Below, piece after piece: positions 12,212 to 43,158 of a stretch of 64,000 nt of DNA (its first letter is position 1; every line of letters begins with the position of its first letter). Under the pieces are notes generated by a model, which had not been told where the DNA came from, searched no databases, and worked only from the letters and a program-made list of their open reading frames with translations. The stretch is taken from IMG/VR virus record IMGVR_UViG_3300047994_000374, positions 248,001-312,000 of that record; one strand, given 5' to 3'. Both the position numbers and the translations under genes were made by a program.

Positions 12212-13441
12212 CTAGTCGCTTAACCCAGTTAATTCGGAAGGTAATTCGCTTTCTAAATCATCCCAAGGGGCTTTTTCACCCGCATCATTTGTAGCTGGTT
12301 TTGTGGCTGTGGCTGGAGCTTCTGCATCCGTATTACTTACCATGGATTCCTGAAGACTATTTTTAGCATTATTTTCGACAGTTTTTGCGCCATCTAATAC
12401 TTTCAAAATATCCTGAACATCCTTCATATAGGTTTGGAGCGCGTGTTTCACATCATCAAAATCATCCGCAACCAAGCCATACCCGCCATGAAGACCGGGA
12501 ACTTTATCAATCAAATCGCTAAATATTCCTTTATCAACTACCTGACGTTTCTTATAAAAATCCGAGCCAAACTCTTGCATGACTTTTTCTAAATATGGGC
12601 TTAGATTTATTGCAGCTGTATGTAAATTATTATAAGCCGAAACGACCGCTTGTGTTTCTTGTTTGGTTGCCATTCCTTTTAATTCATCCGCAGTTTTTGG
12701 AGCTTCTAATTCGGACAAAATAGGCTCTATGCTTTCTTCTAATGAAGCAAATTGTTCAAGACGAGCTTTCAAATCACTAACCATAGATAAAAACTCTGGA
12801 CTATATTGATTGCCCACGCCAAAATCTGTATTGGAATTTAAAAGGTCATCCAATTCTTTCATAAGCTTTTCATTATCCGCTTTGAATCCGTCTGAAATAA
12901 AGGGCAAATGATTTTTTGCGTAAATAGCGCCAAGTGTTGCGGCAATTGGAAGAATAATCGCAAGAGGACCAATGCCTTCTTTAACGATCGACTTTCCTGA
13001 TACTTGTAAAAGGCACGCATCTGCTAAACTTCTTAATTCAGATTCATTTCGGTTATCAAGATCATTGGCAGCTTTAACAAGAGAAAGAATTAACTGTTGT
13101 GCATACTTCTGTTGAAAAATTTGACCTGATGGGGTTTTATTAAGAATATGACGAATAATATTTTGGCGCTCTTGATTGGTTTCGACGAGTCCATTTAATT
13201 TATCATAAGAAGGCGCAATGACCAATGATCCAGGATGTGCAAGCTCAGAAATATTATTATCATATTGCATGTCTTTGGGAGCATCAAGTTTTAGATCATA
13301 TAATTTCGTAACTTCTTCCATGGTTCTTGAATCAGCTCGTCCTGTTTCTTCTAGGATTTGCTTTGAAGTTTTCGCATGGGAAATTAAACCCTTCTCTTCA
13401 GCGATCTTGATAAAATTATTAAATATCTCGTTTTTTTTCAT
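12212..13441 (-). CDS. Hypothetical head-module protein
   Basis: 409 aa; carries the shared AHP...GLVET and KAANDLD modules. Confidence 0.75.
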   Translation of the reverse strand: MKKNEIFNNFIKIAEEKGLISHAKTSKQILEETGRADSRTMEEVTKLYDLKLDAPKDMQYDNNISELAHPGSLVIAPSYDKLNGLVETNQERQNIIRHILNKTPSGQIFQQKYAQQLILSLVKAANDLDNRNESELRSLADACLLQVSGKSIVKEGIGPLAIILPIAATLGAIYAKNHLPFISDGFKADNEKLMKELDDLLNSNTDFGVGNQYSPEFLSMVSDLKARLEQFASLEESIEPILSELEAPKTADELKGMATKQETQAVVSAYNNLHTAAINLSPYLEKVMQEFGSDFYKKRQVVDKGIFSDLIDKVPGLHGGYGLVADDFDDVKHALQTYMKDVQDILKVLDGAKTVENNAKNSLQESMVSNTDAEAPATATKPATNDAGEKAPWDDLESELPSELTGLSD

Positions 13442-13466
13442 GTTGGGCTCTTATTATTATATTGGA

Positions 13467-14477
13467 TTATGAGGCTTTTGCGAGATCATCAATAAAGAGA
13501 TCGGCGAGTTGTTTCTTTGAGGTAAATTCTTTAGGAAAATAAATGGCGTTATTTCCTTGTGTCGTTGAGTTATAGTATTTGATTTTATCTTGGGCGGCGA
13601 GAAATCCTGGAAGCGCTTTGATCTGCTCTTCCTTGCCATCAAGACCTGAATAAACGGATTTCGCAAAATTAATAATTGTTGAATCAATGTTTTCTGGTGT
13701 ATTTTGAATGGGCAACATAAATGGAATGGGCGAGTCTGATTTTAATGGAAATTTGGTTTGTGTAGAAGTTGGTAATGATGATTGAGCGGACGGAGCGGTT
13801 TCAGATCCTGTTTGATCCAATGCATTAGGACGACCAACAAATTTATTAACCACATCGCCTGCTACAAGAAATCCCGCTGCAGAAAGAGCTACTTTAAATA
13901 TCCAGCTTAATACTTGCGTTAAAATATTAGCTGTCTTTGAAGAAGCAATGACGGAAATTGGAGCCGAAGAAAGTGAAAGTGTTTGACGATCAAAATCTTC
14001 CATGGATAAACGAACTAATTTGGCGGCTCGTAAATTCTGATCAAATGTCAGTTTTGGTTGAATGGCTTGTGAAGTTCCTAAATTGGATTGAACTGCAGAA
14101 TGAACAACAGCATCAACTTGAGATGAAGTCGTTTGCTTACCCTCTCCAATTAGCCCTTTAATGTCCGTCCAAATCGTTTGTAAGACACTATTGATATCTA
14201 AATGAAGGGTGGATGCAGCCATTCCAAAGAGCACGCCAATCCATCCAAAGCCCATTGATTTTAAAGTCATAGAAATAACGCCGGGAGCTAAAATATTAAT
14301 GATGGAACCGGCTGGATTTTTTGGATCAATATGCGCGGAAACATAATCTTTAATTTTAGAAACAAGTCCTGCCATCAATCCAGAAGCATCCGCTTTTTTA
14401 TAAAGCGATTTGTTGCCGAGAATTTCCTCAACAATCATCATGTCTGTATAAAAAGAAATGGCAGTATTCTCTGACAT
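13467..14477 (-). CDS. Hypothetical head-module protein with hydrophobic segments
   Basis: 336 aa ORF in the co-oriented cluster. Confidence 0.7.
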   Translation of the reverse strand: MSENTAISFYTDMMIVEEILGNKSLYKKADASGLMAGLVSKIKDYVSAHIDPKNPAGSIINILAPGVISMTLKSMGFGWIGVLFGMAASTLHLDINSVLQTIWTDIKGLIGEGKQTTSSQVDAVVHSAVQSNLGTSQAIQPKLTFDQNLRAAKLVRLSMEDFDRQTLSLSSAPISVIASSKTANILTQVLSWIFKVALSAAGFLVAGDVVNKFVGRPNALDQTGSETAPSAQSSLPTSTQTKFPLKSDSPIPFMLPIQNTPENIDSTIINFAKSVYSGLDGKEEQIKALPGFLAAQDKIKYYNSTTQGNNAIYFPKEFTSKKQLADLFIDDLAKAS

Positions 14478-14478
14478 G

Positions 14479-16055: not shown

Positions 16056-17227
16056 TTTTGGCTAAAGGCATCTAATTTATTTTTTAATATCTCATACTTA
16101 TCGTTGTATCCTTTGACGATAAAAGGATCTGATTTGTTTTCAAGTTTATTATAATTGGTTAATGCTGTTTGTGCAAAAGGAAGCGCTTGTTGTTCTAACC
16201 AACCTCCCAATTTTGTTTGCAGTTCTTGATCGAAACCTACAGATAATCTTTCTCTATATTGCTTGATTGTGTTGATTGCAGACTGAAATTTAGCAGCAAC
16301 ATCATTTTGATTTTCAGAAACTGGCTTTGTATTGTTCGCGGTTGGTGAGCCAGCTGGAAGCGCAGGATCGTATTTTGATTTGACAGAATTTCTAAGGTTA
16401 TCTGTTTCTATTCTGCGAATATTTTCAATTATACTCTTGAAAGAATTGGCTTGCGCATAACCATAATCAAAAATTGGCATTATTTCATTTTCCCATTTTT
16501 GTTGTGTGGCGCCAGAGCTAAAAATACCGGGACTCATATCTTCTTTAAGATCATCTAGTAAATTAGTGAGTGAATTTTCCATTTCCGAAGCAGAATATAC
16601 TTTCTTATTATTTAATGTTAAGCTTAATGCATTAAACATTGCATCATTATCATTATTTTCGCCACCTGATTTTCGGGAAATATCACTATAAATTTGTCTA
16701 AATTTAGATAAAATACTTGATGCTTCTGTGTATAAGTCGTTTAATTTATTTGCATCTTGTGCGAAAACTAATTTTACAGCATTGATAATTTTTGAAGCGC
16801 TTGCAAGTTTGCCCGTTGGCTTTTTATTTACAACATCAACCATTTTAAGATGGCGAGTTAAAATAGATTCAAAGACTGCTTTATCTCCTGCAACACCATC
16901 TAATTTATGACTGCCTTTTGGATGAGCTTGATCAACAAGATCTTCGCCCGTTTCTTTGGAAGTATTATAAAGGGTATTAGCTTTTTTGTATTGAATAAAA
17001 TTATCTTCAATTTCATTCGCAAAACTATCAAACCCCTTGCTCGAAAGTCCTGCGCAAAGACGAAGGATATTTTGAGTAAGATTTGTGGATACGGTTAAAT
17101 CTTGCGGTGCTTTTTCAGATTGCTTTTTAATTGCAGGCTCATGTTTAAATGTGCCCTTTTCTTTGGCTAATTTTTCCAAAGATCTCATGATTGGACTATC
17201 GAAAAAGTCTATGTGCTTATAAGTCAT
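16043..17227 (-). CDS. Hypothetical head-module protein
   Basis: 394 aa; shares the AHP module with 12212..13441. Confidence 0.7.
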   Translation of the reverse strand: MTYKHIDFFDSPIMRSLEKLAKEKGTFKHEPAIKKQSEKAPQDLTVSTNLTQNILRLCAGLSSKGFDSFANEIEDNFIQYKKANTLYNTSKETGEDLVDQAHPKGSHKLDGVAGDKAVFESILTRHLKMVDVVNKKPTGKLASASKIINAVKLVFAQDANKLNDLYTEASSILSKFRQIYSDISRKSGGENNDNDAMFNALSLTLNNKKVYSASEMENSLTNLLDDLKEDMSPGIFSSGATQQKWENEIMPIFDYGYAQANSFKSIIENIRRIETDNLRNSVKSKYDPALPAGSPTANNTKPVSENQNDVAAKFQSAINTIKQYRERLSVGFDQELQTKLGGWLEQQALPFAQTALTNYNKLENKSDPFIVKGYNDKYEILKNKLDAFSQKWFV

Positions 17228-17271: not shown

Positions 17272-18642
17272 TTAGGGTAATTTTGCCTTTTTCTTTAACC
17301 TTATAATAGTGTCTCTAGAAACTCCGTAAGCGTTTCCAATCTCTTTTAATGTCCTATTGTCATTTAATATAGATGTTATTTGTTCATTTGTAAAATCTTT
17401 ATAGTTAGGATTTTTTATAGCAATGCCGGCTTCTTTTTTAATTCTTGTAATCACTCGGCGCGTGGAATTAAAAGTCTTTGCAATTTCGATGAGGCTTCTT
17501 TTATCTGCAATAATAGCTTTAACCTGATCTTCGTTAAATTCAACTTTATTTCTAGGTTTTTTAAATTTTACATATGTTCCCATTTTTGTCTTTAATCTTA
17601 CTATTGTCTGTTGCGAGCAATTATAAATTTTAGCTATTTGCTCATATGGACGAGGATCGTATGCTATATCTATTTTTTGTTGATCGGTAAAATTAATAAC
17701 ATTTGGTTTTTTTGTTATGTACCCTGCGGCTTTTTTGACGCGCACAATAACTGAATCAATAACGCCAAGATCGCGAGCAATTGTACTTAGAGGACGTTTA
17801 TCAGCTATAATGACATCTATTTGATCTTGTGTAAATTTCCTCTTTCCTTTATAATTAGGTTTTCGTGATATTAGGTCTCCATAGTTCAATAATCTTAACC
17901 CATGCTTATTACAATATCGAATGCCATCAATTATTTTATAGGGCTGATAGGCGCCACTGACATCACAATTTGGAGCATTGCATTTTAATTCGCCAGTAGC
18001 TTCTTTTTCCTGTAATTTTTCTGCCCAAACTTCTTTTAAGGATATGACTCTCTTTGCAATAGTTTCTTCTGATTGGACTTTCCCTGTAAGAGCCTCTGAT
18101 TGATGCTTTCTCATTTCATCTGTCCAAATTACTGGGTTAGCCAAACGAGCCCTGCTAAGCGTTTCTGATTGCTCTGGTGTGCGCTTTTTTCCTAAACCAG
18201 GGTGACCTTGAGTTGCAATTTGATTGAACATAGCTTGACGAGCTTTTTCATTTAACTCTTCTCTTTTATCTATAGGGATTGAAGCGTGCCATGCGCGCAT
18301 AGCCTGCCTCCATTCTTCGGATTTTGGAGCATTCATTCCACCGTGTGTTGCATTATACCCTTTTCCGTGCTGTACATAACTGCTATACTGTTTAACTAAT
18401 TCTGTTTCAAGTTCATTTGCATTATCTTGTCCCTTACAAGACGCAATAATTTTGAATTCAAAATTATGATTACCATGTTTTTTTATAGCAAAATGAAATG
18501 GTACTTTTGGATTAGCTGCGTCTCTACAGTGCGCTCTCCACCGCGTATTTGGATTTACTGTTTGTCCAATATATACTTTTTTATTTATAACACATGTAAT
18601 GCAATAAAGATAAATAATCCGAGATTCAATTTCAATTGTCAT
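17272..18642 (-). CDS. GIY-YIG homing endonuclease with NUMOD3-like and tandem HTH repeats
   Basis: IYLYCIT...KVYIGQT...RW..H...ELE...GYN; four C-terminal 'FT.DQ...I..D.R....IA' repeats. Confidence 0.88.
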   Translation of the reverse strand: MTIEIESRIIYLYCITCVINKKVYIGQTVNPNTRWRAHCRDAANPKVPFHFAIKKHGNHNFEFKIIASCKGQDNANELETELVKQYSSYVQHGKGYNATHGGMNAPKSEEWRQAMRAWHASIPIDKREELNEKARQAMFNQIATQGHPGLGKKRTPEQSETLSRARLANPVIWTDEMRKHQSEALTGKVQSEETIAKRVISLKEVWAEKLQEKEATGELKCNAPNCDVSGAYQPYKIIDGIRYCNKHGLRLLNYGDLISRKPNYKGKRKFTQDQIDVIIADKRPLSTIARDLGVIDSVIVRVKKAAGYITKKPNVINFTDQQKIDIAYDPRPYEQIAKIYNCSQQTIVRLKTKMGTYVKFKKPRNKVEFNEDQVKAIIADKRSLIEIAKTFNSTRRVITRIKKEAGIAIKNPNYKDFTNEQITSILNDNRTLKEIGNAYGVSRDTIIRLKKKAKLP

Positions 18643-18702: not shown

Positions 18703-19392
18703 TTACAAAAGTAAGAGACCCAAAAGCGAATTGATCGATGAAGGAGGATCTGTGACTAACGCAATGGCAGGATGAGCTGGACTTGGTCGTCTTGTAGTGA
18801 AAAAACCATTTTCACTTACATAAAGATTGGCATTAAGTGGGTATGTCTGATTAGCTTCATATGTAGATACTTGACAGAACATACGAAACGGCCAAACTGT
18901 CATTCTACCATTACCTAAAGTCGAATCATCTCCAGGAATATTCGCAATGGCATAAGAATAATTTACGACTGTTCTTATGGCATTTGGAGTGCCGACGCCC
19001 GTCATATCAAAATTTAATGGAGTTCCGGCAACGAAAGTAATGACACCATTAATAGGATTTAAAACAACATCAACCGTAGAGCTAAAACTTGACTTTACCA
19101 CATTTGGGCGCCTTAATTCTGCTTTAAGGTCAATGGGCGTAACAAGTGTATTATTTGGTCCTGCTACTCCAGTTGCGGGAACAATAATTACTTCGTTCCA
19201 AGAAATATTTGTAAAAGCTTTCGTCTTTACATCATCAATAATGCCAAGTGGTGCAGTGCCATTACTAACTGTTGCCATAACCGTATTACCAACAACAACG
19301 AGCTGCGCCACCTGTCCAGGCTCAAAGCTCGCGCTTGGGTCGCAAATATAGGACATTGGAATTGCTCCACCAATTTGAACAATTCTTAACAT
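18703..19392 (-). CDS. Putative virion structural (decoration-like) protein
   Basis: Beta-rich 229 aa; 'DSTLGNGRMTVW' resembles 'SATGSGKMTCW' of 10150..10884. Confidence 0.5.
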   Translation of the reverse strand: MLRIVQIGGAIPMSYICDPSASFEPGQVAQLVVVGNTVMATVSNGTAPLGIIDDVKTKAFTNISWNEVIIVPATGVAGPNNTLVTPIDLKAELRRPNVVKSSFSSTVDVVLNPINGVITFVAGTPLNFDMTGVGTPNAIRTVVNYSYAIANIPGDDSTLGNGRMTVWPFRMFCQVSTYEANQTYPLNANLYVSENGFFTTRRPSPAHPAIALVTDPPSSINSLLGLLLL

Positions 19393-19454: not shown

Positions 19455-20339
19455 TCAGTCTTTTTCTTCCTCAAAATCTAATTCTTGTAATGCTGGATTT
19501 TCTAATACTTCAAGAGATTGATCTTCAACATCTAAATTTAATAAATCATCCAAATCATCGTCGCTTGAATTCAAATCAAAATCTTCCACATCCATTAAAT
19601 CCGCTAATTCAGGATCGACATCATTCTTTGTAAAAATATCGGGTTTTCTTGTTTTTTTAAGCCAGCTGTAATATTCTTTTTGTTCGTCGGTTGCGTCTGC
19701 CAAATTATCATCGTTCATATTAAAAACGGTGCCGTGGTCCTTTAAATTATCGACCATCTTTTTGGAATTTAGCTTTTTTGTGTGCCAATCCGTTTTCTTC
19801 TTATTTACTTTTTTTTTAGCAGCATTAACTGTATGGATATTTATTTCATTAGGATCAATTTTCGGAAGAATAACTAAATCATCATTCTCTTCATTTTTCC
19901 AGTCGCCATGGTGGCTTGTTTTACCCAATAAACTAATCGCAGCTTCTTCTGACATTAAATTTTTATGACCAATCATCTTGACAATATCACTTTCGGACAT
20001 GTTCAAGTTGCGTAGGGCTAAATTCATTTTGGCGATGGCAGATTTATTTCCTTCACCGAATTCATAAAGGTCGCGCATCGACAATCCGGCTTGAATAAGT
20101 GATTTAACAGATGGCATGCTTATTTCGGTATTTTCAAGGTCCAATTCGGCGCCATCTCGAGCGACTTTAACAAGAACATTTAATATTTGATTGGATACCG
20201 AAGTTAATCCAGCCTCATCTAAAAGTTTCATTGCTGTATGTATATTATCAATGGCTTTTGTTAAATCATCGTTTTCGTTCGTTGATTTAAGTGTTTCGCT
20301 CATCTTATTCATTAATTCGCTGGCAAAGATTGTTTTCAA
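19455..20339 (-). CDS. Hypothetical head-module protein with acidic tail
   Basis: 294 aa; shared 'LLDEAG....NQI...LVKVA' module. Confidence 0.7.
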   Translation of the reverse strand: MKTIFASELMNKMSETLKSTNENDDLTKAIDNIHTAMKLLDEAGLTSVSNQILNVLVKVARDGAELDLENTEISMPSVKSLIQAGLSMRDLYEFGEGNKSAIAKMNLALRNLNMSESDIVKMIGHKNLMSEEAAISLLGKTSHHGDWKNEENDDLVILPKIDPNEINIHTVNAAKKKVNKKKTDWHTKKLNSKKMVDNLKDHGTVFNMNDDNLADATDEQKEYYSWLKKTRKPDIFTKNDVDPELADLMDVEDFDLNSSDDDLDDLLNLDVEDQSLEVLENPALQELDFEEEKD

Positions 20340-20342: not shown

Positions 20343-20735
20343 TTATTCCTTGCTTGGATGTTCTTTTAAGAATGGAGCAACTGGGCAATCGTGATCGTGA
20401 AGCCCTTCTTGATAATCACAATAAGAACATGGATTACTAATATGCCATTGAGCAGATTCATTAGGTTCATATTCATGATCAAATCCACAAGCGCTACATG
20501 CCTCATAATCGTCAGGATCAGAGATAGATGCCGCTTGAGCAAATTTAAAAAGAATAGAAGTAATATCGTTTGCTTGATTTTGGAAACCGTTGCGATCAAA
20601 TATATCGGCGGCATCTTTTAACAAATTCAATGCAATTTCTAACTTATCTGCATTTTCGGTTTCTTTTTGACCGGAAATGTTTTTTTGCATTGACGACATT
20701 ACTTCTTCATCTATGGATCCGAGTTTATTAAACAT
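20343..20735 (-). CDS. Hypothetical protein, shared module plus Cys/His-rich C-terminus
   Basis: AADIFDRNG..QANDI; CSAC..H, CSYC..HDHDC. Confidence 0.7.
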   Translation of the reverse strand: MFNKLGSIDEEVMSSMQKNISGQKETENADKLEIALNLLKDAADIFDRNGFQNQANDITSILFKFAQAASISDPDDYEACSACGFDHEYEPNESAQWHISNPCSYCDYQEGLHDHDCPVAPFLKEHPSKE

Positions 20736-20741: not shown

Positions 20742-21428
20742 TTATTTTTTGGATGATTTTGAGGCTTTTTCTTTATCAGCCTTCTCTTTGGCTTTTTCTT
20801 TTGCTAATTTATCTTTAGCTGACTGCGCATCTTTCTTTTCTTTTTCTTTCGCTTTTTCTTTAGCAGCCTTTTCTTTTTCAGCTTTTTCTTTTGCTTTAGC
20901 TTTGTCTTTGGCGTCGTTTGAATCTTTTTTGGAATCTTTCTTTGATTCTTTGTCTTTCTTTTTTGCTTCGACAATCAGTGATGCAATTTTGAGAATCATT
21001 TCTGATCCTTTACCGAGATTGAGTTGATCACATGCAGCTGACGCCGTTAAAAGACCGTCAATCGCCATATCAAATGCGGCTGATGACTTTAATTCTTCGT
21101 CCTCTTCTTTCTTGTGTTTGCGAGCATCGTTCTCATCTGAACTCTCTTCTTCTTTCTTGTGACGACGAGCATCATTGTCATCCGCACTCGAAGAATCCGA
21201 GGAGCTTTCTTCCTCTTCTTTTTTATGCTTGCGCGCGGCGTTTGCATCATCTGCACTCGCTGAATCGCATTTGCATTTTTCTTCTTCGCACTTTGAACAT
21301 TTCGCTTTGCGGGCGTCATTTTCATCACTTGCATTTTTAACACGTCCACCGAAAAGGGTTTTGTGTTCTGCGCTGTTAAGGGTCGCATTCATTGAATTGG
21401 CGACGAAATCTGATATACTTTTTGACAT
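20742..21428 (-). CDS. Highly charged, repeat-containing head protein (Lys/Glu-rich tail)
   Basis: Likely start MSKSIS at 21428 (AAGGA RBS); repeats of D[DE]N[DA]AR[KR]HKKEE. Confidence 0.7.
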   Translation of the reverse strand: MSKSISDFVANSMNATLNSAEHKTLFGGRVKNASDENDARKAKCSKCEEEKCKCDSASADDANAARKHKKEEEESSSDSSSADDNDARRHKKEEESSDENDARKHKKEEDEELKSSAAFDMAIDGLLTASAACDQLNLGKGSEMILKIASLIVEAKKKDKESKKDSKKDSNDAKDKAKAKEKAEKEKAAKEKAKEKEKKDAQSAKDKLAKEKAKEKADKEKASKSSKK

Positions 21429-21441: not shown

Positions 21442-24400
21442 TTAGAAAGAACCCTTTTTGTTGCCAAATAACCCTGAGAGTGATGCGACCATATCATTTT
21501 CAACTAATCGCTTTGATGGTGATTCGTCATTTGAAAAGCCGACATTTGGAAGGCGTGAAGCTTGTTTTTGCATAAGTGGTTCATGCTTTGCGACGACGCG
21601 CTTGAATGATTCAAATGAAACGTCATCATATAACATAATTTCATCGACTTGACCTTTAACCTGAGCCTTTTCACGACCACAGAGACCACGATCAATCATA
21701 TCATAAGTGAGTTCATAGGCGCGAGCAATCTTGAGTTTAAACTTGTTGAGGTCAGCTTCGAGCTGCGCTTTAACATGCTCTTTAACTAATTCTGAAGCGA
21801 ATTCTGAACCGCCGTCAACTTGACCGTAGAATTTTTTCCAGTAAGCGACTGCATCTTTATCAAGACCTTCTGCTACGAGAGCATCAACATCTTTTGCATC
21901 TAATTTACCTTCTGAAACTAAACGCTGAATTGCTTCGGCTTCTTTGCGAACCTTTGGTGGAGCTTTTGCAAGATCCATGAAGGCTTTGTTTTGCTCTTCT
22001 TGAGTTTCAACTAAACCAAGATTACCTGATGGCTTGGTATCAAGTTTCGTTTGACCGTCTGCAAGTGAATCAGCTTTATCGAGCATATCACTAAATTTTG
22101 CTTTTGACATGTCTTGAGCTTCACCATCATCTTGTTTACCAAGAGCATCGGCAGCCAATTTCGCTCTAAATGATGCACGAGCTTCTTTGGTTTCGAGTGA
22201 CGCTTTTTTAACTTCTACTTGAGCACCCATGGGGACATCCTTTGGAACCGCTTCGCCTGGAGCAACTTCGAGCTTCATATCATTGTCATCCGCATGCATT
22301 TCTTCATCTTTGTCGTCTAACATTTCTTTTACGGATTCTAAATCTGCATTGGTGTCACCGATTAAATTCATAAGATCGGCACCCTCTGCTAAATGTGTAT
22401 CTTCGCTCATTGACTCTCCTTCAGCTAAAGCCTCCAGTTCTGCTTCGATTTCCGCACGTTTGACGATGGCATTAGTGCCTCGGGCGTACTTTACGAAAGC
22501 AGTCATTAGTGTTAATCCATCGGCAATTGAATGTTTGGTTTCTTTAACCGCATCTTCAACAATAGTGCCGACAAAATCTCTATTTGCATCTGAAACCGCG
22601 CCCTTATCATACATCGAGCTAATCATTTCTAACTCTTCTTGATGATTGGTGAGGTTTGCAATCGTCTCTTTCATTGCTTGAACGAGTTGCCCATTTAATT
22701 CTTTACGGGTTGATTTGAGTGCCGCAGTGCCGAAATTATCGCTTGCCGCTGCGCCCATTTCTGGAGCTGGTTCGGCGCCCATTTCAGCTTGTTCACCAGT
22801 TAATGCACGAACTGATTCGACGAGATCTGAATTAAGGTCGCGAGCTTTTTCTGCAAGTTCGAGAACATTTTCTTTTGGATCGCCAGTTTTGCCCGTATCT
22901 TCAGCTTCTGGCGCACCGAGGTCAGCAGGTGATGCTGCGTCTGGAGCGGCTGGTGCGGCTGGTGCCATTGGAGCTGCTTGTGATTTCTTAATTAATGCCG
23001 AAACGCCCGAAGCGCCTGCAACCTTAACTTTTTCAATCAATGAAGTGCCGAAAGGCTTGGTTGCAATTTGATCATAAAGCATTTCCGTGCGACCACCAGT
23101 GAGTTCATCAACTGATGCAGTAAGGATAAGTTTATCACCAAGGAATACTTCCCATGCTGAATTTGCTTTGTCCTGGGTGCCGTCTGATTTTGCAGCCTTT
23201 ACGAAACGAGCACGGAGCGATGCACGTTGAAGTAATTCTTTACGCTTGAGTTCATCTGGAACCGTAACTGAAGCAGGTGATGGATGAAGGCTATCAACTG
23301 ATCCGACGCCTGGGAATGGCTTTTGACCAACCATTTGTTTATCTTCTTTATCGCGATCAAGCTCATTGAGTTTGTCCGCTGGATATTTAACTTTACCTGG
23401 AGTTGGGGTACCGGGATTTTCTTTTCCGTCGCCGTTCTGGAAATATGCCTTTTTATCTTGAAGGGCGCCTTTTGCGAGTTGAAGAATTGCTGCTCGTTTG
23501 ACGGCACGATCTTCTGACTCTGCTCGGGCAAGCATCTTTTTACGAGTAAGCTCATCCGCAGTTTCGGCTGAGGCTGGTGATGGATGCATCCCATCAACTG
23601 CGCCAACTTCTGGAAATGGAGCTTGACCATTCATGTGCTTGTCCTCTTCTCTTGCCGTTTCATTAAGAGGATCTTTTGGATATTTAACTTGTCCGGGGGT
23701 TGGTTCATTGACTCCGCCAGCGCCTTGGTAGTAACCTTTTTTATTCATATCAGACATCATTTCCTCTTGTGTTTTTGAAGTTTTAGACAATTTTTCCAGA
23801 CTTTCTTTCATTTGATTTAGTTTTGCTTCAATAGTCAATGCGACTTCTTTAAGCTCTTCAATCGAATCCTTTTCCAAATTTACTGCTGCGTAACGTGCTT
23901 GCTGTGGTGACTGTAGCGATAAACCAGAATCGGTGGGAGTGCCCTCTGACATTGCGATGGAGCCCGACGATTGATTGTATGCAGAATTATTACTATCTTT
24001 TTCAGATTTTTTTGCTAAATCATAAATATTTGATAATTTGGCAAATGCATCATCAAGGTCTTGTTTAAATTTAACAAGATCATTTGCATTCACATTGATT
24101 TGCATATGATTAGGACCTTCATTACTTTCACTGTCATTTGCGTCTAATTGCGCATTAAAAGTAAGATCTGCTAATTTTTCGATTTCATTCTGTTTGCTTT
24201 CGACATAAGCGTTTAGATGATTCGCGGCCGCAAGAACTTGTTTAATGTGAGCTTTTGGATCGGCGCCATTAACAACGATAGAAAGTTCAATTGGATTTAA
24301 ATCGACGTTAATTTCACCGTAACCTGATTTTGTTTTCATATGTGAACAAAAATCAGACTCAACGCGAGCAACTTTCGCACAATCATAACAAATAGCTTGA

Positions 24401-24966
24401 CCAACGGCAGTACCCATGGAAACAGCAGTCTGCATTCCAGTTGAAACTTTTCTTGCAAGTTCCGGATAATTGGCTTTATCAAGAGCACAAAGAGCAACAA
24501 CGCGCTTTAACTTACGGTCATAATAAGTATCGACAATGAACCCGCGCGTATGATCGACAGATGAAGATTTATGATCTAAGCAAAGTGGTTTCCCTATCCA
24601 TTTTTTATGAGCCGTGATTAATTGTGATTCTGGGAAAATATCACCATTAGAATTTTTAAATGCCCGAACACTTGGGTCACTTGAAACCCAACGCCAAGTA
24701 TTATTTGACGTATCCCAACCAACTTTAACTTCTTCACCGAAACGATTTAATTTTGGGGTTCCATCATCATTAACGGCTGAGGCTTCCGCTGCGTGCATAA
24801 TTACGGCAACCATATATAAAAAATCATCTGCTTTTGGGGCGACTTTTTTCAAATCACCCGCCATTTTATAAAATTTATTTAATGCATCTTGATCAACCAT
24901 TGGAGCTGATGATTCTGTTGATTGAATATCAATCCCTACCAATTCACCGATTTTAATAAATGACAT
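21442..24966 (-). CDS. Prohead maturation protease fused to a long scaffold-like region (1174 aa)
   Basis: NGD.F...GKPL.LDH, YPELA.KV..G...VSMG and ELS.V..GADP.A motifs of HK97/herpes-type proteases, followed by a coiled-coil, repeat-rich region. Confidence 0.75.
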   Translation of the reverse strand: MSFIKIGELVGIDIQSTESSAPMVDQDALNKFYKMAGDLKKVAPKADDFLYMVAVIMHAAEASAVNDDGTPKLNRFGEEVKVGWDTSNNTWRWVSSDPSVRAFKNSNGDIFPESQLITAHKKWIGKPLCLDHKSSSVDHTRGFIVDTYYDRKLKRVVALCALDKANYPELARKVSTGMQTAVSMGTAVGQAICYDCAKVARVESDFCSHMKTKSGYGEINVDLNPIELSIVVNGADPKAHIKQVLAAANHLNAYVESKQNEIEKLADLTFNAQLDANDSESNEGPNHMQINVNANDLVKFKQDLDDAFAKLSNIYDLAKKSEKDSNNSAYNQSSGSIAMSEGTPTDSGLSLQSPQQARYAAVNLEKDSIEELKEVALTIEAKLNQMKESLEKLSKTSKTQEEMMSDMNKKGYYQGAGGVNEPTPGQVKYPKDPLNETAREEDKHMNGQAPFPEVGAVDGMHPSPASAETADELTRKKMLARAESEDRAVKRAAILQLAKGALQDKKAYFQNGDGKENPGTPTPGKVKYPADKLNELDRDKEDKQMVGQKPFPGVGSVDSLHPSPASVTVPDELKRKELLQRASLRARFVKAAKSDGTQDKANSAWEVFLGDKLILTASVDELTGGRTEMLYDQIATKPFGTSLIEKVKVAGASGVSALIKKSQAAPMAPAAPAAPDAASPADLGAPEAEDTGKTGDPKENVLELAEKARDLNSDLVESVRALTGEQAEMGAEPAPEMGAAASDNFGTAALKSTRKELNGQLVQAMKETIANLTNHQEELEMISSMYDKGAVSDANRDFVGTIVEDAVKETKHSIADGLTLMTAFVKYARGTNAIVKRAEIEAELEALAEGESMSEDTHLAEGADLMNLIGDTNADLESVKEMLDDKDEEMHADDNDMKLEVAPGEAVPKDVPMGAQVEVKKASLETKEARASFRAKLAADALGKQDDGEAQDMSKAKFSDMLDKADSLADGQTKLDTKPSGNLGLVETQEEQNKAFMDLAKAPPKVRKEAEAIQRLVSEGKLDAKDVDALVAEGLDKDAVAYWKKFYGQVDGGSEFASELVKEHVKAQLEADLNKFKLKIARAYELTYDMIDRGLCGREKAQVKGQVDEIMLYDDVSFESFKRVVAKHEPLMQKQASRLPNVGFSNDESPSKRLVENDMVASLSGLFGNKKGSF

Positions 24967-25858: not shown

Positions 25859-26605
25859 TTAATCGTAAATAAAGCCCGTCATATTTACTGTCGGTCCAGC
25901 CCCACTCAAACCGGCATCATTATTAAATACGCCGTTTTGTGGTATTTTATCAATTTCTGTAATGACTTTTGCATTCGGATCGTAGTTTTGACGAGTTTGA
26001 AATTGATCATTAATAGGATTATCTACTTGATCAAATGGCGAAGTTCTTGTTGAATCTAAAAATGGAGCAAACGAACCTTGATGACCTTCGTCTAAAAAGG
26101 AATCTCGGTTATCTCCAATGTATTCTCTTTGGTTAGAAACAATATCTGCATGATTGCTATCGGATTCTGATTTGCATGAGCGAATTATCTTTTCATAATC
26201 AGCGGTCATTTTTGGAGGAATTCCAACGCCAAATCCTAATTGTTTGGCTTCTTTAATAGCTTCTTCTGGCGACTTTCCTAAATACTTACATTGAACTAAA
26301 GCAATAGCAAGTCCCGTGCGATCCTTACCAGCCGAACACCCAACGAATACTGGTCCACCTTCTAAAAACAACTTCTTCATATCTTGATCTAAAAACTCTT
26401 TCAATCCTTTATCAAAACTAATATAAAGTTTTATCTGATCAATTCCTAATAACTTGCATGTTCTTGAGATAGTTTCGCCGACTTCTTTGTCTAAACTTAC
26501 GATCTTTTTAATGCCTAAATGATCTTGCAACCATTTGACATCTTTGGGACTTAAAGCGCCACCACGGTAGAGTCCTTTAGTTACTTTTCGAAGGCGCTTG
26601 ATCAC
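25859..26605 (-). CDS. Dual-specificity/tyrosine phosphatase-like protein (CX5R)
   Basis: LYRGG...GIKKIVSL...PVFVGCSAGKDRTG P-loop. Confidence 0.85.
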   Translation of the reverse strand: MIKRLRKVTKGLYRGGALSPKDVKWLQDHLGIKKIVSLDKEVGETISRTCKLLGIDQIKLYISFDKGLKEFLDQDMKKLFLEGGPVFVGCSAGKDRTGLAIALVQCKYLGKSPEEAIKEAKQLGFGVGIPPKMTADYEKIIRSCKSESDSNHADIVSNQREYIGDNRDSFLDEGHQGSFAPFLDSTRTSPFDQVDNPINDQFQTRQNYDPNAKVITEIDKIPQNGVFNNDAGLSGAGPTVNMTGFIYD

Positions 26606-27336: not shown

Positions 27337-27722
27337 TTTTTCTTTTCGAAGGCTTTTTTAATTCCAATGGAGTCTGTACTTCTCAACATCATGTCTCCAA
27401 TCACGCCTTTTCCATCTACTTCATTTAAAGCTCGAATCGCTCTTTCATTCACAAAAACCATATTTCCCATTTGAGCTGTATGAGATTTATCAACGTATGC
27501 GCAATTTAAAATCAAGCATTCTCGATAAGCTGCTACCACTGTTCCGACGAATACGGATGGATAAGGAGTTGATACTTGCTCGGTGCTAATATCTTCATAC
27601 GAATCGCCCAAATAAATTTCAATAAACTTATCTTTAAATATAAGTGCTAAAAATTCGGCAAATGTTTTTCCTGTTCCTTGCAAACTATCAATAACACTTT
27701 GCACATCTTTTATGTCGGGCAT
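27333..27722 (-). CDS. Hypothetical protein
   Basis: 129 aa ORF, translationally coupled to its neighbours. Confidence 0.7.
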   Translation of the reverse strand: MPDIKDVQSVIDSLQGTGKTFAEFLALIFKDKFIEIYLGDSYEDISTEQVSTPYPSVFVGTVVAAYRECLILNCAYVDKSHTAQMGNMVFVNERAIRALNEVDGKGVIGDMMLRSTDSIGIKKAFEKKK

Positions 27723-38189: not shown

Positions 38190-39848
38190 TTATACGGTTG
38201 GAGGTAATGGCGTTGGAGCCGGTGGGGGAGCCGCAGGTTTTCCATCGAGATCTTCGTCAATTTCTACATTTGGAGTTTCTTTTGTAGCAAGATCCGCTTC
38301 TTCATTTTCTTGCTTCTTGCGATTTTCTTTACGTGCTTTTTCTTTATCAGCGTCAAGTTGCAAGTTATTTTTTACAGATTGAACGGCTGGATTATCTTCT
38401 TGCTGCCCACCTGTCAAATCAACATCGCCGCCTGCTGACGCTCCTCGTAATTTGGCAAGCATATCATCTACGCGAGTTGAAATATAATTGTTCGAATCCA
38501 ATGCTTTATTTTGTGCTTCACTTAAATTACTAAAATAAGAAGCAATTCCAAGTTGTTGCATCATAATATCAATTAGAGCAAGCTGACGAGGGATTTCTCG
38601 AACTTTAAATATTTTTGATAAGTCTTCAAGTTTCGCAACAACATCGTCAATTGTAATATTGGCAAGTGCTGCGTCGATTTTTTCATCGACCGCATTGCCT
38701 TTTGCTGCTTCTGCTTGTTCGTCGGTAGGTACATCATCCTCCGAAACTTCCAAAGGCTTCTCGGTGGCAGGTGGAGCGACTGTTGGGGATGCTGGAGGCG
38801 GAGGGACAACTTGAGCTTCCGATACCATGAGGACGTCATCTTCGACTTCAAGAACATCGTCGGCTGCCTCTAAATCTTTAGGATCTGTGTCGCCCGCAGT
38901 ATCCATTTGAACAAGAAATTCTTCAATACCTTTTGATTTTGGCTTATCTTGAACTTCAGGTGGAGGAGCTTTAAAGGCGCTTACTGGGGGCTGATCTTTA
39001 TTTTGATCGTTAAATGAAGATGTTTGCACATTTGGAACGCCGGGAATTGTTGCGGGTAGTCCTCCAGGTGCGCCTTCAGGTGTCGTTGGCGAAGGTGGGG
39101 GAGTGGCATTTAAATCTGGATCTGCTGTTTTGTATAAAAATTCTGCCGACTTTACTAAACCTCTGCGGCGTAGAACATTGCTTTCACGAACGATCATATC
39201 TTCATACAAACGAACAGATGAGCTTATTTTATTGACAAGTTGAATTTTCTTTTTTAATGAGTAAATGGATTCCATTAAATCTTCAAGCTCATTTCCTGCG
39301 AAAAGCTGTCCCTCTTGTGAGCGAAGTAGTTTCTCAGCAGAATCTAACCGACCAATAATTTTACTTCGTTGCGCCTCAATGGTTTGTTTTTTTTGTGCTT
39401 TTTGGGCTAAATCCTCTTGAACATTTTCGATGGAATGATGATCTGATTTTAATTGTGGAGCTGGAGGATCCTTTTTAAGGTGCAAGAAATATCCTGGTGA
39501 GCCATTTTCATACCATTGCGCAGTTTTATATTTCAATTGATTTCCTTCTTCGTAATATCTCATCCAGTTCAAAAAGTCGAAAGTTTCAGTTGGATTCCAC
39601 TCTTGAGTAACCGATTTAATGGCTTCTCTTCTTGATATTCCATTCTGCTTTTCTTGAGTATATAGCTTTTTAACGGTAGCTACCCACTTCTCTAAATTGT
39701 AATTCGTTGGGGTATACATGACGGCATTATCATTTGGATATGCCTCTTTATTGAGCCTATCATAATTAATGGCGTGAAAATCGAAAAATGAAAACAAGGA
39801 CGCAATTTCTTGTTCTAACCCATATGAATAAAGATTTTTTTTATTCAT
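38190..39848 (-). CDS. Hypothetical head-module protein (552 aa)
   Basis: Multiple KEAY/KTAQ/KSAE/KTAD motifs and Pro-rich linkers. Confidence 0.7.
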   Translation of the reverse strand: MNKKNLYSYGLEQEIASLFSFFDFHAINYDRLNKEAYPNDNAVMYTPTNYNLEKWVATVKKLYTQEKQNGISRREAIKSVTQEWNPTETFDFLNWMRYYEEGNQLKYKTAQWYENGSPGYFLHLKKDPPAPQLKSDHHSIENVQEDLAQKAQKKQTIEAQRSKIIGRLDSAEKLLRSQEGQLFAGNELEDLMESIYSLKKKIQLVNKISSSVRLYEDMIVRESNVLRRRGLVKSAEFLYKTADPDLNATPPPSPTTPEGAPGGLPATIPGVPNVQTSSFNDQNKDQPPVSAFKAPPPEVQDKPKSKGIEEFLVQMDTAGDTDPKDLEAADDVLEVEDDVLMVSEAQVVPPPPASPTVAPPATEKPLEVSEDDVPTDEQAEAAKGNAVDEKIDAALANITIDDVVAKLEDLSKIFKVREIPRQLALIDIMMQQLGIASYFSNLSEAQNKALDSNNYISTRVDDMLAKLRGASAGGDVDLTGGQQEDNPAVQSVKNNLQLDADKEKARKENRKKQENEEADLATKETPNVEIDEDLDGKPAAPPPAPTPLPPTV

Positions 39849-40614: not shown

Positions 40615-40659
40615 TAAAATTCTCGCCTTTATCAGGTAAATACGAGATTATTGGCGGTG

Positions 40660-41441: not shown

Positions 41442-41463
41442 TGATTATACCTCAATAATATAT

Positions 41464-42417
41464 TTAATTATTAGGAAAACTATTGTCAAGTGATAATTTA
41501 TTTTTAATAGATTTTACGATTATTTCCCAATCTAGTTGCCAAATTGTAATAATATTATATCCATTTTCTTTTAAAAATTGTTCCCTTGATATGGTTTCTT
41601 TATATAGTTGTCCATATGTCTTTTTCAAAACGGGATGCATTTCTTCAGGAGGATACTGCGGATTATTGGGATTTCCGTGCCAAAAATCTCCATAAAATTC
41701 ATAGATAGTATTTGTTTTATGATCAAATGCGTCAGTTTTAATTAGCCGTCCATCTACTTTGAATTTTATATGATGATATTCTTCTGGTATTTTTAAATAA
41801 GCAATCCACTCTAATTCCATATTTGAAATAGATGACTTGCATTTTGGGCATCCAGAACCTGCTACGTGATGCGCCGCTTTTTGTTCAAAAAATCCATGTT
41901 TGGGACATTTTATTGTTATTTTATCGTGAGTGTTTATATATTCGCCAAAATACTCATACTTATTTTTATGAACTTTATTCGCTTCGCTTACGAATTTTTC
42001 CATTCCTTTTTTATGTAAGTTCGCCCGGACTTCGTCAGCGCAATCTCTACAGCCGCCGCCCGTTAAATGAGTATGTGGAGTTTGCCTAAATAAACCGTGT
42101 TTTGGGCATATAATACTAATTTTTGTTTCTGTATTTTTATATTCTTCTGGGAAAGGGTATGAATAAAAATTATTGTGCTTTTTGTTTGCGTTTTTTAAAA
42201 AATCTCCAAGTTTAGTTCTTTTCTTAATGTCAGCGCATGTCTTGCAACCACATCCGTTCAAGTGATTGCCCGGCTTCTGCTCGAAAGCTCCATGAATTTG
42301 GCATAATATATTTATTTTAGTATCCATATTTATATATTCTTCAGGATACGAATATTTATTTGAATGAATTTTATTAGCTTTAATTACAAATTGTTCGTGA
42401 GTTAGGCGCACAGTCAT
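41464..42417 (-). CDS. Putative homing endonuclease with three zinc-binding repeats and a Vsr/PD-(D/E)XK-like C-terminus
   Basis: Three C..HG.F.Q....H..G.GC..C repeats; D...IYEFYGDFWHG. Confidence 0.8.
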   Translation of the reverse strand: MTVRLTHEQFVIKANKIHSNKYSYPEEYINMDTKINILCQIHGAFEQKPGNHLNGCGCKTCADIKKRTKLGDFLKNANKKHNNFYSYPFPEEYKNTETKISIICPKHGLFRQTPHTHLTGGGCRDCADEVRANLHKKGMEKFVSEANKVHKNKYEYFGEYINTHDKITIKCPKHGFFEQKAAHHVAGSGCPKCKSSISNMELEWIAYLKIPEEYHHIKFKVDGRLIKTDAFDHKTNTIYEFYGDFWHGNPNNPQYPPEEMHPVLKKTYGQLYKETISREQFLKENGYNIITIWQLDWEIIVKSIKNKLSLDNSFPNN

Positions 42418-42435
42418 ACTTCATATATATCAAGA

Positions 42436-43158
42436 TTATTTATTATTTAAACGTCCGTCCCTTGAATCGAAAAATGTGGCAAAAAATCGGTTATCCAATC
42501 CCAAATCTGATTGAGCTGAAACGCTTCCACCAGGTACTTTAGTTCCATTTAAAAGCGTAAACCCATTTTCGAAATCGTAATGTTTATGATCTAAACTACA
42601 TATATAAACCGAGTCCGATCCTTCAAGCTTAAACATACCTGTACCAGGATGATCTGGGCACGACCGCGCCTTCAAGGGCGAACCTTCAATTGGCATATTT
42701 TTTACATATTCTGATTTTTCAACTTCTTTTGCTTGATCGGCAGTCTTGTTATAATCTTTTAATTTTTCTGCAGTTCCTTGGTACTTGAGGCGCAATGTTT
42801 CAAGACGCGCATCTTCTTCGGCTTTTTTATTACGAATGGCATCTTTTGGGGCGGCGATTGTTAATAGAAGCTCATCAAGAACACTTGCTTGTTTTCTCAA
42901 TGCAGGATCATCTGAACTATCCAATGCAGTCGCTAAATTTGCAATCTCTTCAATGGACTCTGGTGTAATAACAGATTCGGCTTCTGGTTCAATTGCATCT
43001 ACTTCTGACGCTGCATTCTTTAATAAGTCGGCAGCCTGAACTAAAGCGTGAGCAACCACTTCCAAACACTTTTCATCGTATTCAGAAAGGAGCAATGCTG
43101 GATTTTCGACATCTTCTAAATCATTTGCATAAGCTTTTAGTAAATCAGATATCCGCAT
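42436..43158 (-). CDS. Hypothetical protein with shared helical module and C-terminal Zn motif
   Basis: LATALD...KQASVLD; CPDH...C. Confidence 0.7.
   Translation of the reverse strand: MRISDLLKAYANDLEDVENPALLLSEYDEKCLEVVAHALVQAADLLKNAASEVDAIEPEAESVITPESIEEIANLATALDSSDDPALRKQASVLDELLLTIAAPKDAIRNKKAEEDARLETLRLKYQGTAEKLKDYNKTADQAKEVEKSEYVKNMPIEGSPLKARSCPDHPGTGMFKLEGSDSVYICSLDHKHYDFENGFTLLNGTKVPGGSVSAQSDLGLDNRFFATFFDSRDGRLNNK

What the first reader, a model, noticed from the sequence alone, without database searches (positions are those of the whole stretch)
12212..43158. Recurrent helical module 'A..LD..G....A..I...L.K.A' on unrelated proteins: candidate capsid-targeting tag
Instances include AMKLLDEAGLTSVSNQILNVLVKVA (19455), AADIFDRNGFQNQANDITSILFKFA (20343), ASAACDQLNLGKGSEMILKIA (20742), AANDLDNRNESELRSLADACL (12212), CAGLSSKGFDSFANEIE (16043), ATALDSSDDPALRKQASVLDELL (42436) and SNVLRRRGLVKSAEFLYKTA (38190). 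It usually precedes a K-x-A site and a different payload, as expected of a removable docking propeptide that loads cargo into the prohead.
Basis: partly seen in the sequence, partly recalled or inferred. Interest (0 to 1): 0.7.

Follow-up and report, generated by a model that had tools for sequence, protein, structure and literature searches.

The report
Shared helical domain in phage head-module proteins
Three neighbouring genes beside the capsid protease-scaffold gene of a 394-kb phage share a real, undescribed 70-residue helical N-terminal domain found across huge phages. The other four cited instances are only generic helix-turn-helix look-alikes, and nothing yet shows that the domain is a cleavable capsid-targeting tag.

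Summary
The window is part of a 394,192-bp jumbo-phage genome whose head module is distantly related to that of Bacillus phage G. The motif is real for three of the seven cited proteins. These are the tandem genes 20742-21428, 20343-20735 and 19455-20339 (all minus strand), directly downstream of a protease-scaffold fusion gene.

In these three the motif is helices 2-3 of a ~70-residue, three-helix N-terminal domain ("N-dom"). Cross-family HMMs built without window sequences give E = 7e-8 and 1e-14. The third paralogue carries the domain split by an acidic insert (profile-profile P = 6e-4, above all 23 reversed-alignment controls).

N-dom has at least 571 cluster representatives in metagenomes and no Pfam or PHROG model. 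It starts at residue 1-8 in about 140 of the 150 listed hits. It often stands alone (31 of 181 proteins).

The other four instances are conserved helix-Gly-helix hairpins whose similarity to N-dom lies within the null range. Two of them (12212 and 16043) are paralogues of each other through a different N-terminal domain (P = 5e-11).

A pentapeptide Phi-x-K-Phi-A ends N-dom and recurs near the N-termini of the capsid protein, the protease and other head-module proteins. This fits a maturation site or docking helix, but it is unproven. The tag-plus-cargo idea remains a hypothesis.

The parts
20142..20339 (-). N-dom (res 1-66) of p19455, the 'long' paralogue. The domain ends in L-V-K-V-A.
   Evidence: Short-family HMM without window sequences gives E=6.8e-8. 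Alignments.
19707..19790 (-). Conserved C-terminal motif of the long paralogue (res 184-211, DWHTKKLNSKKMVDNLKDHGTVFNMNDD). It is followed by an acidic tail ending in FEEE.
   Evidence: Invariant columns. The same motif occurs in most long family members. 90 of 150 tails end in an F-E-D-E-like motif.
20538..20735 (-). N-dom (res 1-66) of p20343, the 'short' paralogue. It ends in L-F-K-F-A.
   Evidence: Long-family HMM without window sequences gives E=1.1e-14. The 74-aa orthologues in L001 and L002 consist of the domain alone.
20379..20519 (-). Cys-rich C-terminal add-on of p20343 (res 73-119), absent from its orthologues.
   Evidence: It matches the free-standing 94-aa protein P0007 (58% identity over the region), which lies among small genes in an unrelated context.
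21372..21428 (-). Probable true start of p20742 (ATG at 21428) and helix 1 of its split N-dom (MSKSISDFVANSMNATLNS).
   Evidence: Two-piece HMM hits in genes at the same position: HMM positions 1-25 at the N-terminus and 25-70 after the insert.
20982..21077 (-). Helix 2-turn-helix 3 of the split N-dom in p20742 (res 143-174). It ends in I-L-K-I-A.
   Evidence: hhalign score 26.7, P=5.8e-4, above all 23 reversed-alignment nulls.
20745..20981 (-). Lys-rich low-complexity tail of p20742 (res 175-253).
   Evidence: Sequence. Genes at this position in relatives have K-rich or D/E-rich tails.
21442..24966 (-). Prohead protease-scaffold fusion (1174 aa). Phi-x-K-Phi-A occurs at res 32-36, 39-43, 262-266 and 824-828.
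   Evidence: The N-terminal part matches phage G gp19 and PHROG 18299 (head maturation protease). The C-terminal end matches phage G gp21. The sites at 36 and 828 are conserved in orthologues.
13010..13072 (-). Flagged hairpin of p12212. It is conserved in orthologues but is not significantly N-dom-like.
   Evidence: hhalign score 20.5, P=0.015, against a null maximum of 20.3.
13118..13432 (-). N-terminal domain of p12212 (res 4-108). It is shared with p16043 and starts with the motif SEIF.NF.KIA.EKGLI.
   Evidence: hhalign of the p12212 family against the p16043 family gives Prob 97%, P=4.7e-11 over 97 columns, with the shared sequence removed.
16805..17197 (-). Paralogous N-terminal domain of p16043 (res 11-141). 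The flagged hairpin (17006-17056) lies in an insert within it.
   Evidence: hairpin H50-63/H67-86 in a low-confidence model.
42865..42933 (-). Flagged hairpin of p42436. It is strongly conserved in the orthologue alignment but is not significantly N-dom-like.
   Evidence: hhalign score 16.8, P=0.045.
39123..39182 (-). Flagged hairpin of p38190. It is conserved in orthologues but the similarity to N-dom is at chance level.
   Evidence: Forward score 20.5 against 20.3 for its own reversed alignment.
9072..9149 (-). N-terminal extension of the major capsid protein, carrying L-T-K-Y-A (res 22-26).
   Evidence: The motif is conserved as [VMLT]-[AVT]-K-[YF]-A in 3 of 3 orthologues. The extension is absent from phage G gp27.
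18703..19392 (-). Beta-rich protein directly downstream of the N-dom trio, in the position of phage G's decoration gene. It lacks the motif.
   Evidence: Synteny. 0 of 30 orthologues carry Phi-x-K-Phi-A.

Best explanation
The recurring pattern is real only as part of a ~70-residue, three-helix N-terminal domain (N-dom). It sits on three tandem paralogues encoded directly after the prohead protease-scaffold gene:
- p20742, where the domain is split by an acidic insert and followed by a Lys-rich tail
- p20343, where the domain is followed by a captured Cys-rich module
- p19455, where the domain is followed by a mosaic middle region and a conserved HTKGL...FNM...FEDE tail

Shown: the trio arose by duplication.

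Inferred: these are small accessory proteins of the prohead core (scaffold-associated or internal proteins), comparable in position and size to T4 gp67/gp68. N-dom would be the interaction module that brings them, and whatever is fused behind it, into the assembling core. This may work through pairing of the short and long paralogues. Phi-x-K-Phi-A would be either the last turn of the docking helix or the maturation-protease site.

The other four cited segments are family-specific, conserved helical hairpins that look alike because that pattern is generic. p12212 and p16043 are paralogues of each other through a different N-terminal domain.
For: - Homology of the p19455 and p20343 N-termini.
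- Split domain in the p20742 family.
- Family size and position: 571 representatives at E<=1e-3 and 261 at E<=1e-10. In about 140 of the 150 listed hits the domain starts at residue 1-8. Lengths are 65-390 aa apart from four TPR-repeat proteins.
- Synteny across 49 metagenomic loci runs terminase, portal, protease-scaffold, trio, decoration-like gene, p16043...p12212, MCP. An N-dom gene lies within 3.5 kb of the protease-scaffold gene in 18 of 26 loci that reach far enough.
- AF2 model: helices 5-22, 26-48 and 52-69, with mean pLDDT of 89-96 per ten-residue block over residues 31-70.
- Multi-stretch hits of the profile are TPR_12/TPR_10 repeat proteins.
- Tail survey: 31 of 181 are domain-only, and 90 of 150 tails end in an F-E-D-E-like motif.
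- Complex prediction of long with short N-dom: weak support, score 0.50 against a best control of 0.01. That mark was reached by 58 of 80 solved complexes and 2 of 110 mismatched pairs, but scores of 0.60 or under are more often wrong than right. The runs agree in at least 92% of contacts, and the partner's pLDDT is at least 70.
- Phi-x-K-Phi-A is concentrated in head-module families and absent from the portal, terminase, decoration-like and lysozyme families. It is also present in phage G protease gp19.
Against: - No proteomic, structural or genetic data exist for any member. The head-core role rests on gene position alone.
- Fold searches found no informative neighbour.
- The heterodimer prediction is only weak.
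- The most divergent relatives (8 of 26 loci) show no detectable N-dom gene.
- Phi-x-K-Phi-A is only modestly enriched genome-wide: 73 observed against 50 +/- 7 in shuffles. Its pattern is expected in amphipathic Lys/Ala-rich helices.
- One conserved protease copy is followed by Pro, an unlikely P1' residue.
Confidence: 0.55

Rival explanations
1. One reading: N-dom is a removable capsid-targeting propeptide. It docks to the scaffold or capsid, carries a C-terminal cargo into the prohead, and is cut off by the prohead protease after K-Phi-A, in the manner of the T4 capsid targeting sequence.
For: - The domain is almost always N-terminal.
- It lies next to the protease-scaffold gene.
- K-Phi-A is conserved exactly at the domain boundary, and several short members end at or 2-3 residues after it.
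- The same pentapeptide occurs in the MCP N-terminal extension, at the protease N-terminus and in phage G gp19.
- Tails are mosaic and include a Cys-rich module that exists as a free-standing gene elsewhere.
- The Lys-rich tail of p20742 resembles basic internal proteins (the comparison is from own knowledge).
Against: - One paralogue per genome, and 31 of 181 members, have no cargo.
- Most long members share one conserved C-terminal motif, so the cargo is not diverse.
- The module is a folded 70-residue domain rather than a short peptide.
- There is no evidence of cleavage. No paper found describes the specificity of this protease group.
- The conserved copy at protease residues 39-43 is followed by Pro.
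Confidence: 0.2
2. No common function: the pattern A..L[DE]..G....A..h..hh is simply what antiparallel helix-turn-helix (TPR-like) packing looks like in Ala/Lys/Glu-rich helical proteins. On this view all resemblances beyond the duplicated trio, including Phi-x-K-Phi-A, are compositional.
For: - The four extra instances score within the reversed-alignment null.
- The N-dom profile picks up ordinary TPR_12 repeat proteins.
- Genome-wide enrichment of Phi-x-K-Phi-A over shuffles is modest, z about 3.
- PDB fold hits are weak and include assorted TPR or designed helical repeats.
Against: - The trio is significantly homologous and conserved in position.
- K-Phi-A is conserved column-wise in unrelated head-module families (MCP, protease, p15204, p43964) and absent from others of similar composition.
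- 6 of 22 other head-region families (i.e. excluding the p20742 family) reach P<=0.05 against N-dom, where about 1 is expected. hhalign P-values for helical proteins are not reliable, however.
Confidence: 0.2
3. N-dom proteins are not assembly factors. They are packaged or early-acting effectors or DNA-binding proteins, such as internal proteins that coat DNA or are ejected into the host, and N-dom is an oligomerisation domain.
For: - p20742 has a Lys-rich tail.
- p19455 res 80-124 matches the TALE-like DNA-binding repeat protein BurrH at E=3.6e-4.
- Cys-rich zinc-ribbon-like tails occur in several members.
- Long members have an acidic F-E-D-E C-terminus.
Against: The BurrH match is short and no stretch passes on its own. 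The tails vary, and many members have no tail at all. Gene position argues for a role during head assembly.
Confidence: 0.1

Closest known systems
T4 capsid targeting sequence (CTS) of internal proteins IPI-III and Alt
   Same: Both are N-terminal elements shared by otherwise different proteins. In T4 the CTS directs proteins into the scaffolding core and can carry foreign proteins (PMC3012670). Here the element is N-terminal, lies in the head module and ends in a short conserved motif.
   Different: The T4 CTS is about 10 residues and ends in the L/I-x-E protease site (own knowledge). N-dom is a folded 70-residue three-helix domain, often stands alone, and has no L/I-x-E. Neither cleavage nor packaging has been shown.
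T4 prohead core proteins gp67 and gp68
   Same: Both are small proteins encoded beside the protease and scaffold genes, and gp67/gp68 are part of the scaffolding core (own knowledge). Gene position and size are similar here.
   Different: There is no sequence similarity (PHROG searches were empty). The trio here are paralogues of one another.
Paralogous head and ejection protein families with propeptides in phiKZ-like giant phages (phiKZ, SPN3US)
   Same: Both are giant-phage heads with paralogous internal protein families processed by a T4-like prohead protease (PMC5694885 and PMC10052503, listed).
   Different: Those proteases cut after Glu (A/S/G-x-E; own knowledge). No such consensus is seen here. 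There is no homology, and the phage lineage is different (phage G-like portal, protease and MCP).
TPR_12 / TPR_10 tetratricopeptide repeats
   Same: Positions 23-56 of the N-dom profile align repeatedly to TPR_12-type repeat proteins such as P0008 and P0019. The packing signature is the same: helix, small-residue turn, helix.
   Different: N-dom is a single hairpin plus one helix, not a tandem array. No N-dom member reaches any Pfam TPR model.
P22 scaffolding protein coat-binding helix-turn-helix, and the targeting tails of the HK97 protease and encapsulin cargo
   Same: These are short helical elements that dock a protein to the inside of an HK97-fold shell (own knowledge).
   Different: Those elements are C-terminal, whereas N-dom is N-terminal. 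No sequence or fold match was found.

Membership tests
N-dom family (defined here: ~70-aa three-helix N-terminal domain) | Significant match to an HMM or profile built without the query: p19455 and p20343 | tested here: met
   E=6.8e-8 and 1.1e-14. The best shuffled hit is below 11 bits.
N-dom family (defined here: ~70-aa three-helix N-terminal domain) | Significant match: p20742 family | tested here: met
   hhalign score 26.7, P=5.8e-4, against a null maximum of 20.3. Genes in the same position give two-piece hits down to E=2e-10. The window protein alone does not reach significance by hmmsearch.
N-dom family (defined here: ~70-aa three-helix N-terminal domain) | Significant match: p12212, p16043, p42436 and p38190 families | tested here: not met
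   Scores are 20.5, 17.8, 16.8 and 20.5, against a reversed null of 12.4 +/- 3.3 with maximum 20.3. None appears in HMM searches of the genome.
T4-type capsid targeting sequence / propeptide | Located at the N-terminus of the carrier | tested here: met
   The domain starts at residue 1-8 in about 140 of the 150 listed hits. The exceptions are four TPR-repeat proteins and P0150.
T4-type capsid targeting sequence / propeptide | A short peptide (~10 aa) ending in the protease site L/I-x-E | tested here: not met
   N-dom is a 70-residue folded domain. Its boundary motif is Phi-x-K-Phi-A, with no conserved L/I-x-E.
T4-type capsid targeting sequence / propeptide | Attached to unrelated cargo proteins | tested here: inconclusive
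   Tails are mosaic and some are clearly foreign, such as the Cys-rich module P0007. However, 31 of 181 members have no tail and most long members share one conserved C-terminal motif.
T4-type capsid targeting sequence / propeptide | Removed by the prohead protease, with the carrier found inside heads | not testable with these tools
   No cultured member or proteome is available. The phage G multi-omics paper gives no cleavage sites.
Tetratricopeptide repeat (Pfam TPR clan) | Match to a Pfam TPR model at gathering score | tested here: not met
   Among 20 long N-doms there were only single sub-threshold hits: ComR_TPR at 0.034 and SNAP at 0.12.
Tetratricopeptide repeat (Pfam TPR clan) | Tandem array of 34-residue helix-turn-helix repeats | tested here: not met
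   The AF2 model has three helices, which is one hairpin plus a leading helix.
Phage G-like head module | Portal, prohead protease and major capsid protein homologous to phage G gp14, gp19 and gp27 | tested here: met
   Portal 33% identity (E=2e-76), protease 34% (E=2e-30), MCP C-terminal part 51% (E=6e-53).

The most novel reading that the evidence does not exclude
Phi-x-K-Phi-A is the recognition or cleavage motif of the phage-G-type prohead protease, and N-dom is a natural, transferable 70-residue packaging module. It would load fused proteins (zinc-ribbon, TALE-like or Lys-rich DNA-binding tails) into the proheads of huge phages, with the domain-only paralogue acting as its partner in the core. 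That would be a second protein-packaging system, independent of the T4 CTS, and specific to megaphage capsids.
Probability: 0.2. Interest if true: 0.65.

Novelty: new member of a known kind. Interest (0 to 1): 0.35.

Why it matters
Head assembly in the phage G-like huge phages is almost unstudied. This work defines an undescribed domain family of at least 571 sequence clusters. It is fixed next to the protease-scaffold gene, occurs as three paralogues, and has a sharply conserved boundary motif that also appears on the capsid protein and the protease.

If the boundary motif is the maturation site, processed head proteins could be predicted across hundreds of uncultured megaphage genomes. N-dom could then serve as a packaging tag. 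If it is not, the result still gives a clean annotation: two paralogue sets in the head module, and a warning that TPR-like hairpins mimic a shared tag.

Tried and rejected
- All-vs-all BLASTP in the genome: no paralogy among the carriers.
- Leave-one-out HMMs from the three window segments: not significant.
- tblastn of p19455 and p20343 against 50,697 phage records: nothing useful.
- IMG/VR scan with the single protease-scaffold protein: no relative. The alignment-based scans worked.
- Pfam and PHROGs on all carriers and on the N-dom alignments: no family.
- Foldseek of the N-dom model against PDB and BFVD: no hit below E=0.01 other than two uncharacterised viral proteins (30% identity, probably family members).
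- ESM Atlas look-alikes of p19455: one unnamed viral cluster at score 0.76.
- The genome search on the metagenomic records: records not held.
- hhalign of N-dom against the scaffold protein: P=0.14, no N-dom-like segment.
- hhalign of the p12212 N-terminus against the p25196 N-termini: gave an absurd score (134 over 10 columns, 0% identity). Discarded as a gap artefact.
- AF2 of p16043: low confidence (pLDDT 61), so not used for fold search.
- Complex prediction of long with short N-dom: weak support only, score 0.50 against a best control of 0.01. It is used as a lead, not as evidence.
- T4-like L-x-E or phiKZ-like A-x-E sites: an [IV]-L-x-E motif follows K-[YF]-A in the window capsid protein and its three orthologues, but no such motif is consistent across the other families. 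Checked by reading the sequences.
- Literature searches for a cleavage motif of this protease group: none found.
- Rfam and tRNA scans of the window: empty.

Full report
**Context.** The window is bases 248,001-312,000 of a single 394,192-bp contig with 36% G+C. Almost all genes are on the minus strand. The portal (30256-32034) is 33% identical to that of Bacillus phage G. The N-terminal 260 residues of the 1174-aa protein at 21442-24966 match the phage G prohead protease gp19 and PHROG 18299. Its C-terminal end matches phage G gp21. The major capsid protein (MCP) matches phage G gp27 but is split in the window.

Alignment-based scans recovered 49 metagenomic and 80 IMG/VR loci of a clade of huge phages, with contigs up to 459 kb. 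Gene order is conserved. It runs terminase, portal, several conserved genes, protease-scaffold, three small genes, a beta-rich decoration-like gene (18703-19392), p16043, p15204, p14479, p13467, p12212, p10150 and MCP. The other two (p38190, p42436) lie 3-8 kb upstream of the terminase.

**The observation.** The coordinates in the finding are the stop-codon ends of minus-strand ORFs. The peptides lie inside the ORFs at the positions listed. Taken within the genome alone, the resemblance is not significant. The literal consensus fits only p20343, BLASTP finds no paralogy, and leave-one-out HMMs of the three best segments score at shuffle level.

**The real module.** Distant orthologues settle the question.
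- p19455 has 30%-identical relatives in which the flagged segment is among the best conserved parts.
- In relative L001 the neighbouring 74-aa and 256-aa proteins share their first 69 residues at BLASTP E=3e-9. The 74-aa protein is the orthologue of window p20343 at E=2e-11.
- HMMs built from one paralogue family only, without any window sequence, find the other paralogue in the window proteome at E=6.8e-8 and 1.1e-14. A ten-fold shuffled proteome stays below 11 bits.
- The shared unit ("N-dom") starts at Met1 and spans about 70 residues. AlphaFold2 predicts three helices (5-22, 26-48, 52-69) with high confidence for the last two.
- The first gene after the protease-scaffold (p20742; true start probably the ATG at 21428) carries the same domain split by an acidic low-complexity insert. 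Several proteins in this position give two-piece HMM hits, with helix 1 at the N-terminus and the hairpin 90-150 residues later, down to E=2e-10.
- Profile-profile comparison of N-dom with the p20742 family scores 26.7 (P=5.8e-4). Twenty-three reversed-alignment controls give 12.4 +/- 3.3 with a maximum of 20.3.

**Extent of the family.** A profile search of 1.84 billion cluster representatives found 571 proteins at E<=1e-3 and 261 at E<=1e-10. In about 140 of the 150 listed hits the domain starts at residue 1-8. Lengths are 65-390 aa, apart from four longer TPR-repeat proteins.
- No Pfam or PHROG model covers the domain. Fold searches return only two probable, uncharacterised family members.
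- The few multi-stretch hits are ordinary TPR_12/TPR_10 repeat proteins. Their repeat (LDKAVEYIEEAIGIYEELGL...) mirrors the N-dom hairpin. The sequence signature is therefore that of a TPR-like hairpin.
- Among 181 proteins with a full N-terminal N-dom, 31 are the domain alone.
- The 150 with tails mostly form one mosaic family. It has a conserved HTKGLTPEKMV.NL..HG..FNM..DD motif, and an acidic end (F-E-D-E-like) occurs in 90 of the 150 tails.
- Other tails include zinc-ribbon-like Cys-rich modules. The one on window p20343 also occurs as a free-standing 94-aa gene in an unrelated context.
- Relatives usually encode a short (66-80 aa, domain-only) and a long N-dom protein side by side. 18 of 26 loci that extend at least 2 kb past the protease-scaffold show at least one N-dom gene. 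The eight without one are among the most divergent relatives.

**The other four instances.** Each flagged segment is conserved in its own orthologue family as a helix-Gly-helix hairpin. Similarity to N-dom is within the null, however. p12212 scores 20.5, p16043 17.8 and p42436 16.8. p38190 scores 20.5 forward against 20.3 for its own reversed alignment. None is found by any HMM search of the genome.

They are best read as look-alikes produced by a generic packing pattern. Unexpectedly, p12212 and p16043 are paralogues of each other through a different N-terminal domain. That domain begins with the motif S.[IV][FM]..[FL].[KR][IL]A.EKG[LW][IV]. The comparison gives hhalign Prob 97%, P=4.7e-11 over 97 columns after removal of a shared sequence. 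The 24-residue motif alone gives P=4.9e-8. The head module thus holds two independent paralogue sets.

**The K-x-A remark.** N-dom ends in Phi-x-K-Phi-A (LVKVA, LFKFA, ILKIA). This is conserved in nearly all relatives, and several short members stop at or 2-3 residues after it. The same pentapeptide occurs in other head-module proteins:
- near the N-terminus of the MCP, in a ~40-residue extension that phage G lacks, conserved in 3 of 3 orthologues
- in p12212, p14479, p15204, p16043, p28867 and p43964
- twice at the protease N-terminus, and at residues 262 and 824 of the protease-scaffold
- in phage G protease gp19

These occurrences are documented. The motif is absent from the portal, terminase, decoration-like, lysozyme-like and p10150 families.

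Genome-wide the excess over shuffles is modest: 73 against 50 +/- 7 overall, and 32 against 18 +/- 4 within the first 70 residues. The pattern is also one that amphipathic helices favour, and one conserved copy is followed by Pro. It is therefore a lead for a maturation site or a docking helix, not a demonstrated site. No paper found gives the cleavage specificity of this protease group.

**Mechanism.**

Shown:
- A conserved, N-terminal, three-helix domain sits on three tandem paralogues placed between the scaffold and capsid genes.
- Its tails are mosaic.
- Its boundary motif is conserved.

Inferred:
- The proteins are accessory components of the prohead core.
- N-dom is their interaction module.

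A complex prediction of long with short N-dom gave only weak support. The score was 0.50 against a best control of 0.01. That mark was reached by 58 of 80 solved complexes and 2 of 110 mismatched pairs. Scores of 0.60 or under, however, are more often wrong than right. The runs agree in at least 92% of contacts and the partner's pLDDT is at least 70.

The tag-plus-cargo model remains possible. The boundary motif, the strict N-terminal position and the captured modules favour it. Against it stand the frequent cargo-less members, the single dominant tail family, the size of the domain compared with the T4 CTS (PMC3012670; its length is from own knowledge), and the lack of any evidence of cleavage.

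**Verdict.** The finding is an undescribed but ordinary kind of feature: a paralogous head-module protein family with a shared N-terminal domain. It is of moderate interest mainly because it makes the maturation and packaging signals of phage G-like huge phages testable.

Noticed in passing
window 6950-9149 (-): The major capsid protein gene is interrupted. Residues 1-~78 are encoded at 9149-~8925 and residues ~76-343 at ~7744-6950. The ~1.2-kb intervening sequence carries a LAGLIDADG-type ORF (7838-8764). It looks like an intron with a homing endonuclease, but Rfam finds no group I or II intron.
   Followed up: partly
window 32071-35031 (-): The large terminase is 986 aa here against about 618 aa in relatives. 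The ~370-residue insert contains a LAGLIDADG motif (LLGLWLGDGC), so it is probably an intein.
   Followed up: no
window 11026-12207 (+): A TnpB-like (IS200/IS605-type) ORF sits on the opposite strand inside the head module, between p12212 and p10150. Three further copies (33-41% identical) lie elsewhere in the genome.
   Followed up: no
window 17272-18642 (-): A GIY-YIG-like homing-endonuclease ORF with repeated helix-turn-helix modules lies between the decoration-like gene and p16043. Paralogues occur elsewhere in the genome, and it is absent from this position in most relatives.
   Followed up: no
window 19968-20102 (-), p19455 res 80-124: The middle part of the long N-dom protein matches the TALE-like DNA-binding repeat protein BurrH (PDB 4cj9) at E=3.6e-4. 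It appears to hold about two ~33-residue repeats that are also present in some orthologues.
   Followed up: no
window 25859-26605 (-) and 27722-28864 (-): A tyrosine-phosphatase-like protein (Y_phosphatase3, E=2e-7) and an SLT/lysozyme-domain protein lie between the portal and protease genes. Both are conserved there across the clade.
   Followed up: no
window 13467-14477 (-): p13467 contains long Gly/Ala-rich hydrophobic stretches (e.g. GVISMTLKSMGFGWIGVLFGMAAS). These suggest membrane insertion, as in ejection or pilot proteins. It is conserved between p14479 and p12212 in relatives.
   Followed up: no
window 41464-42417 (-): A 317-aa ORF with three repeats of a Cys-containing ~50-residue unit has a 41%-identical paralogue elsewhere in the genome. 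It is present in only 7 relatives at this position and is probably another mobile endonuclease-like insert.
   Followed up: no
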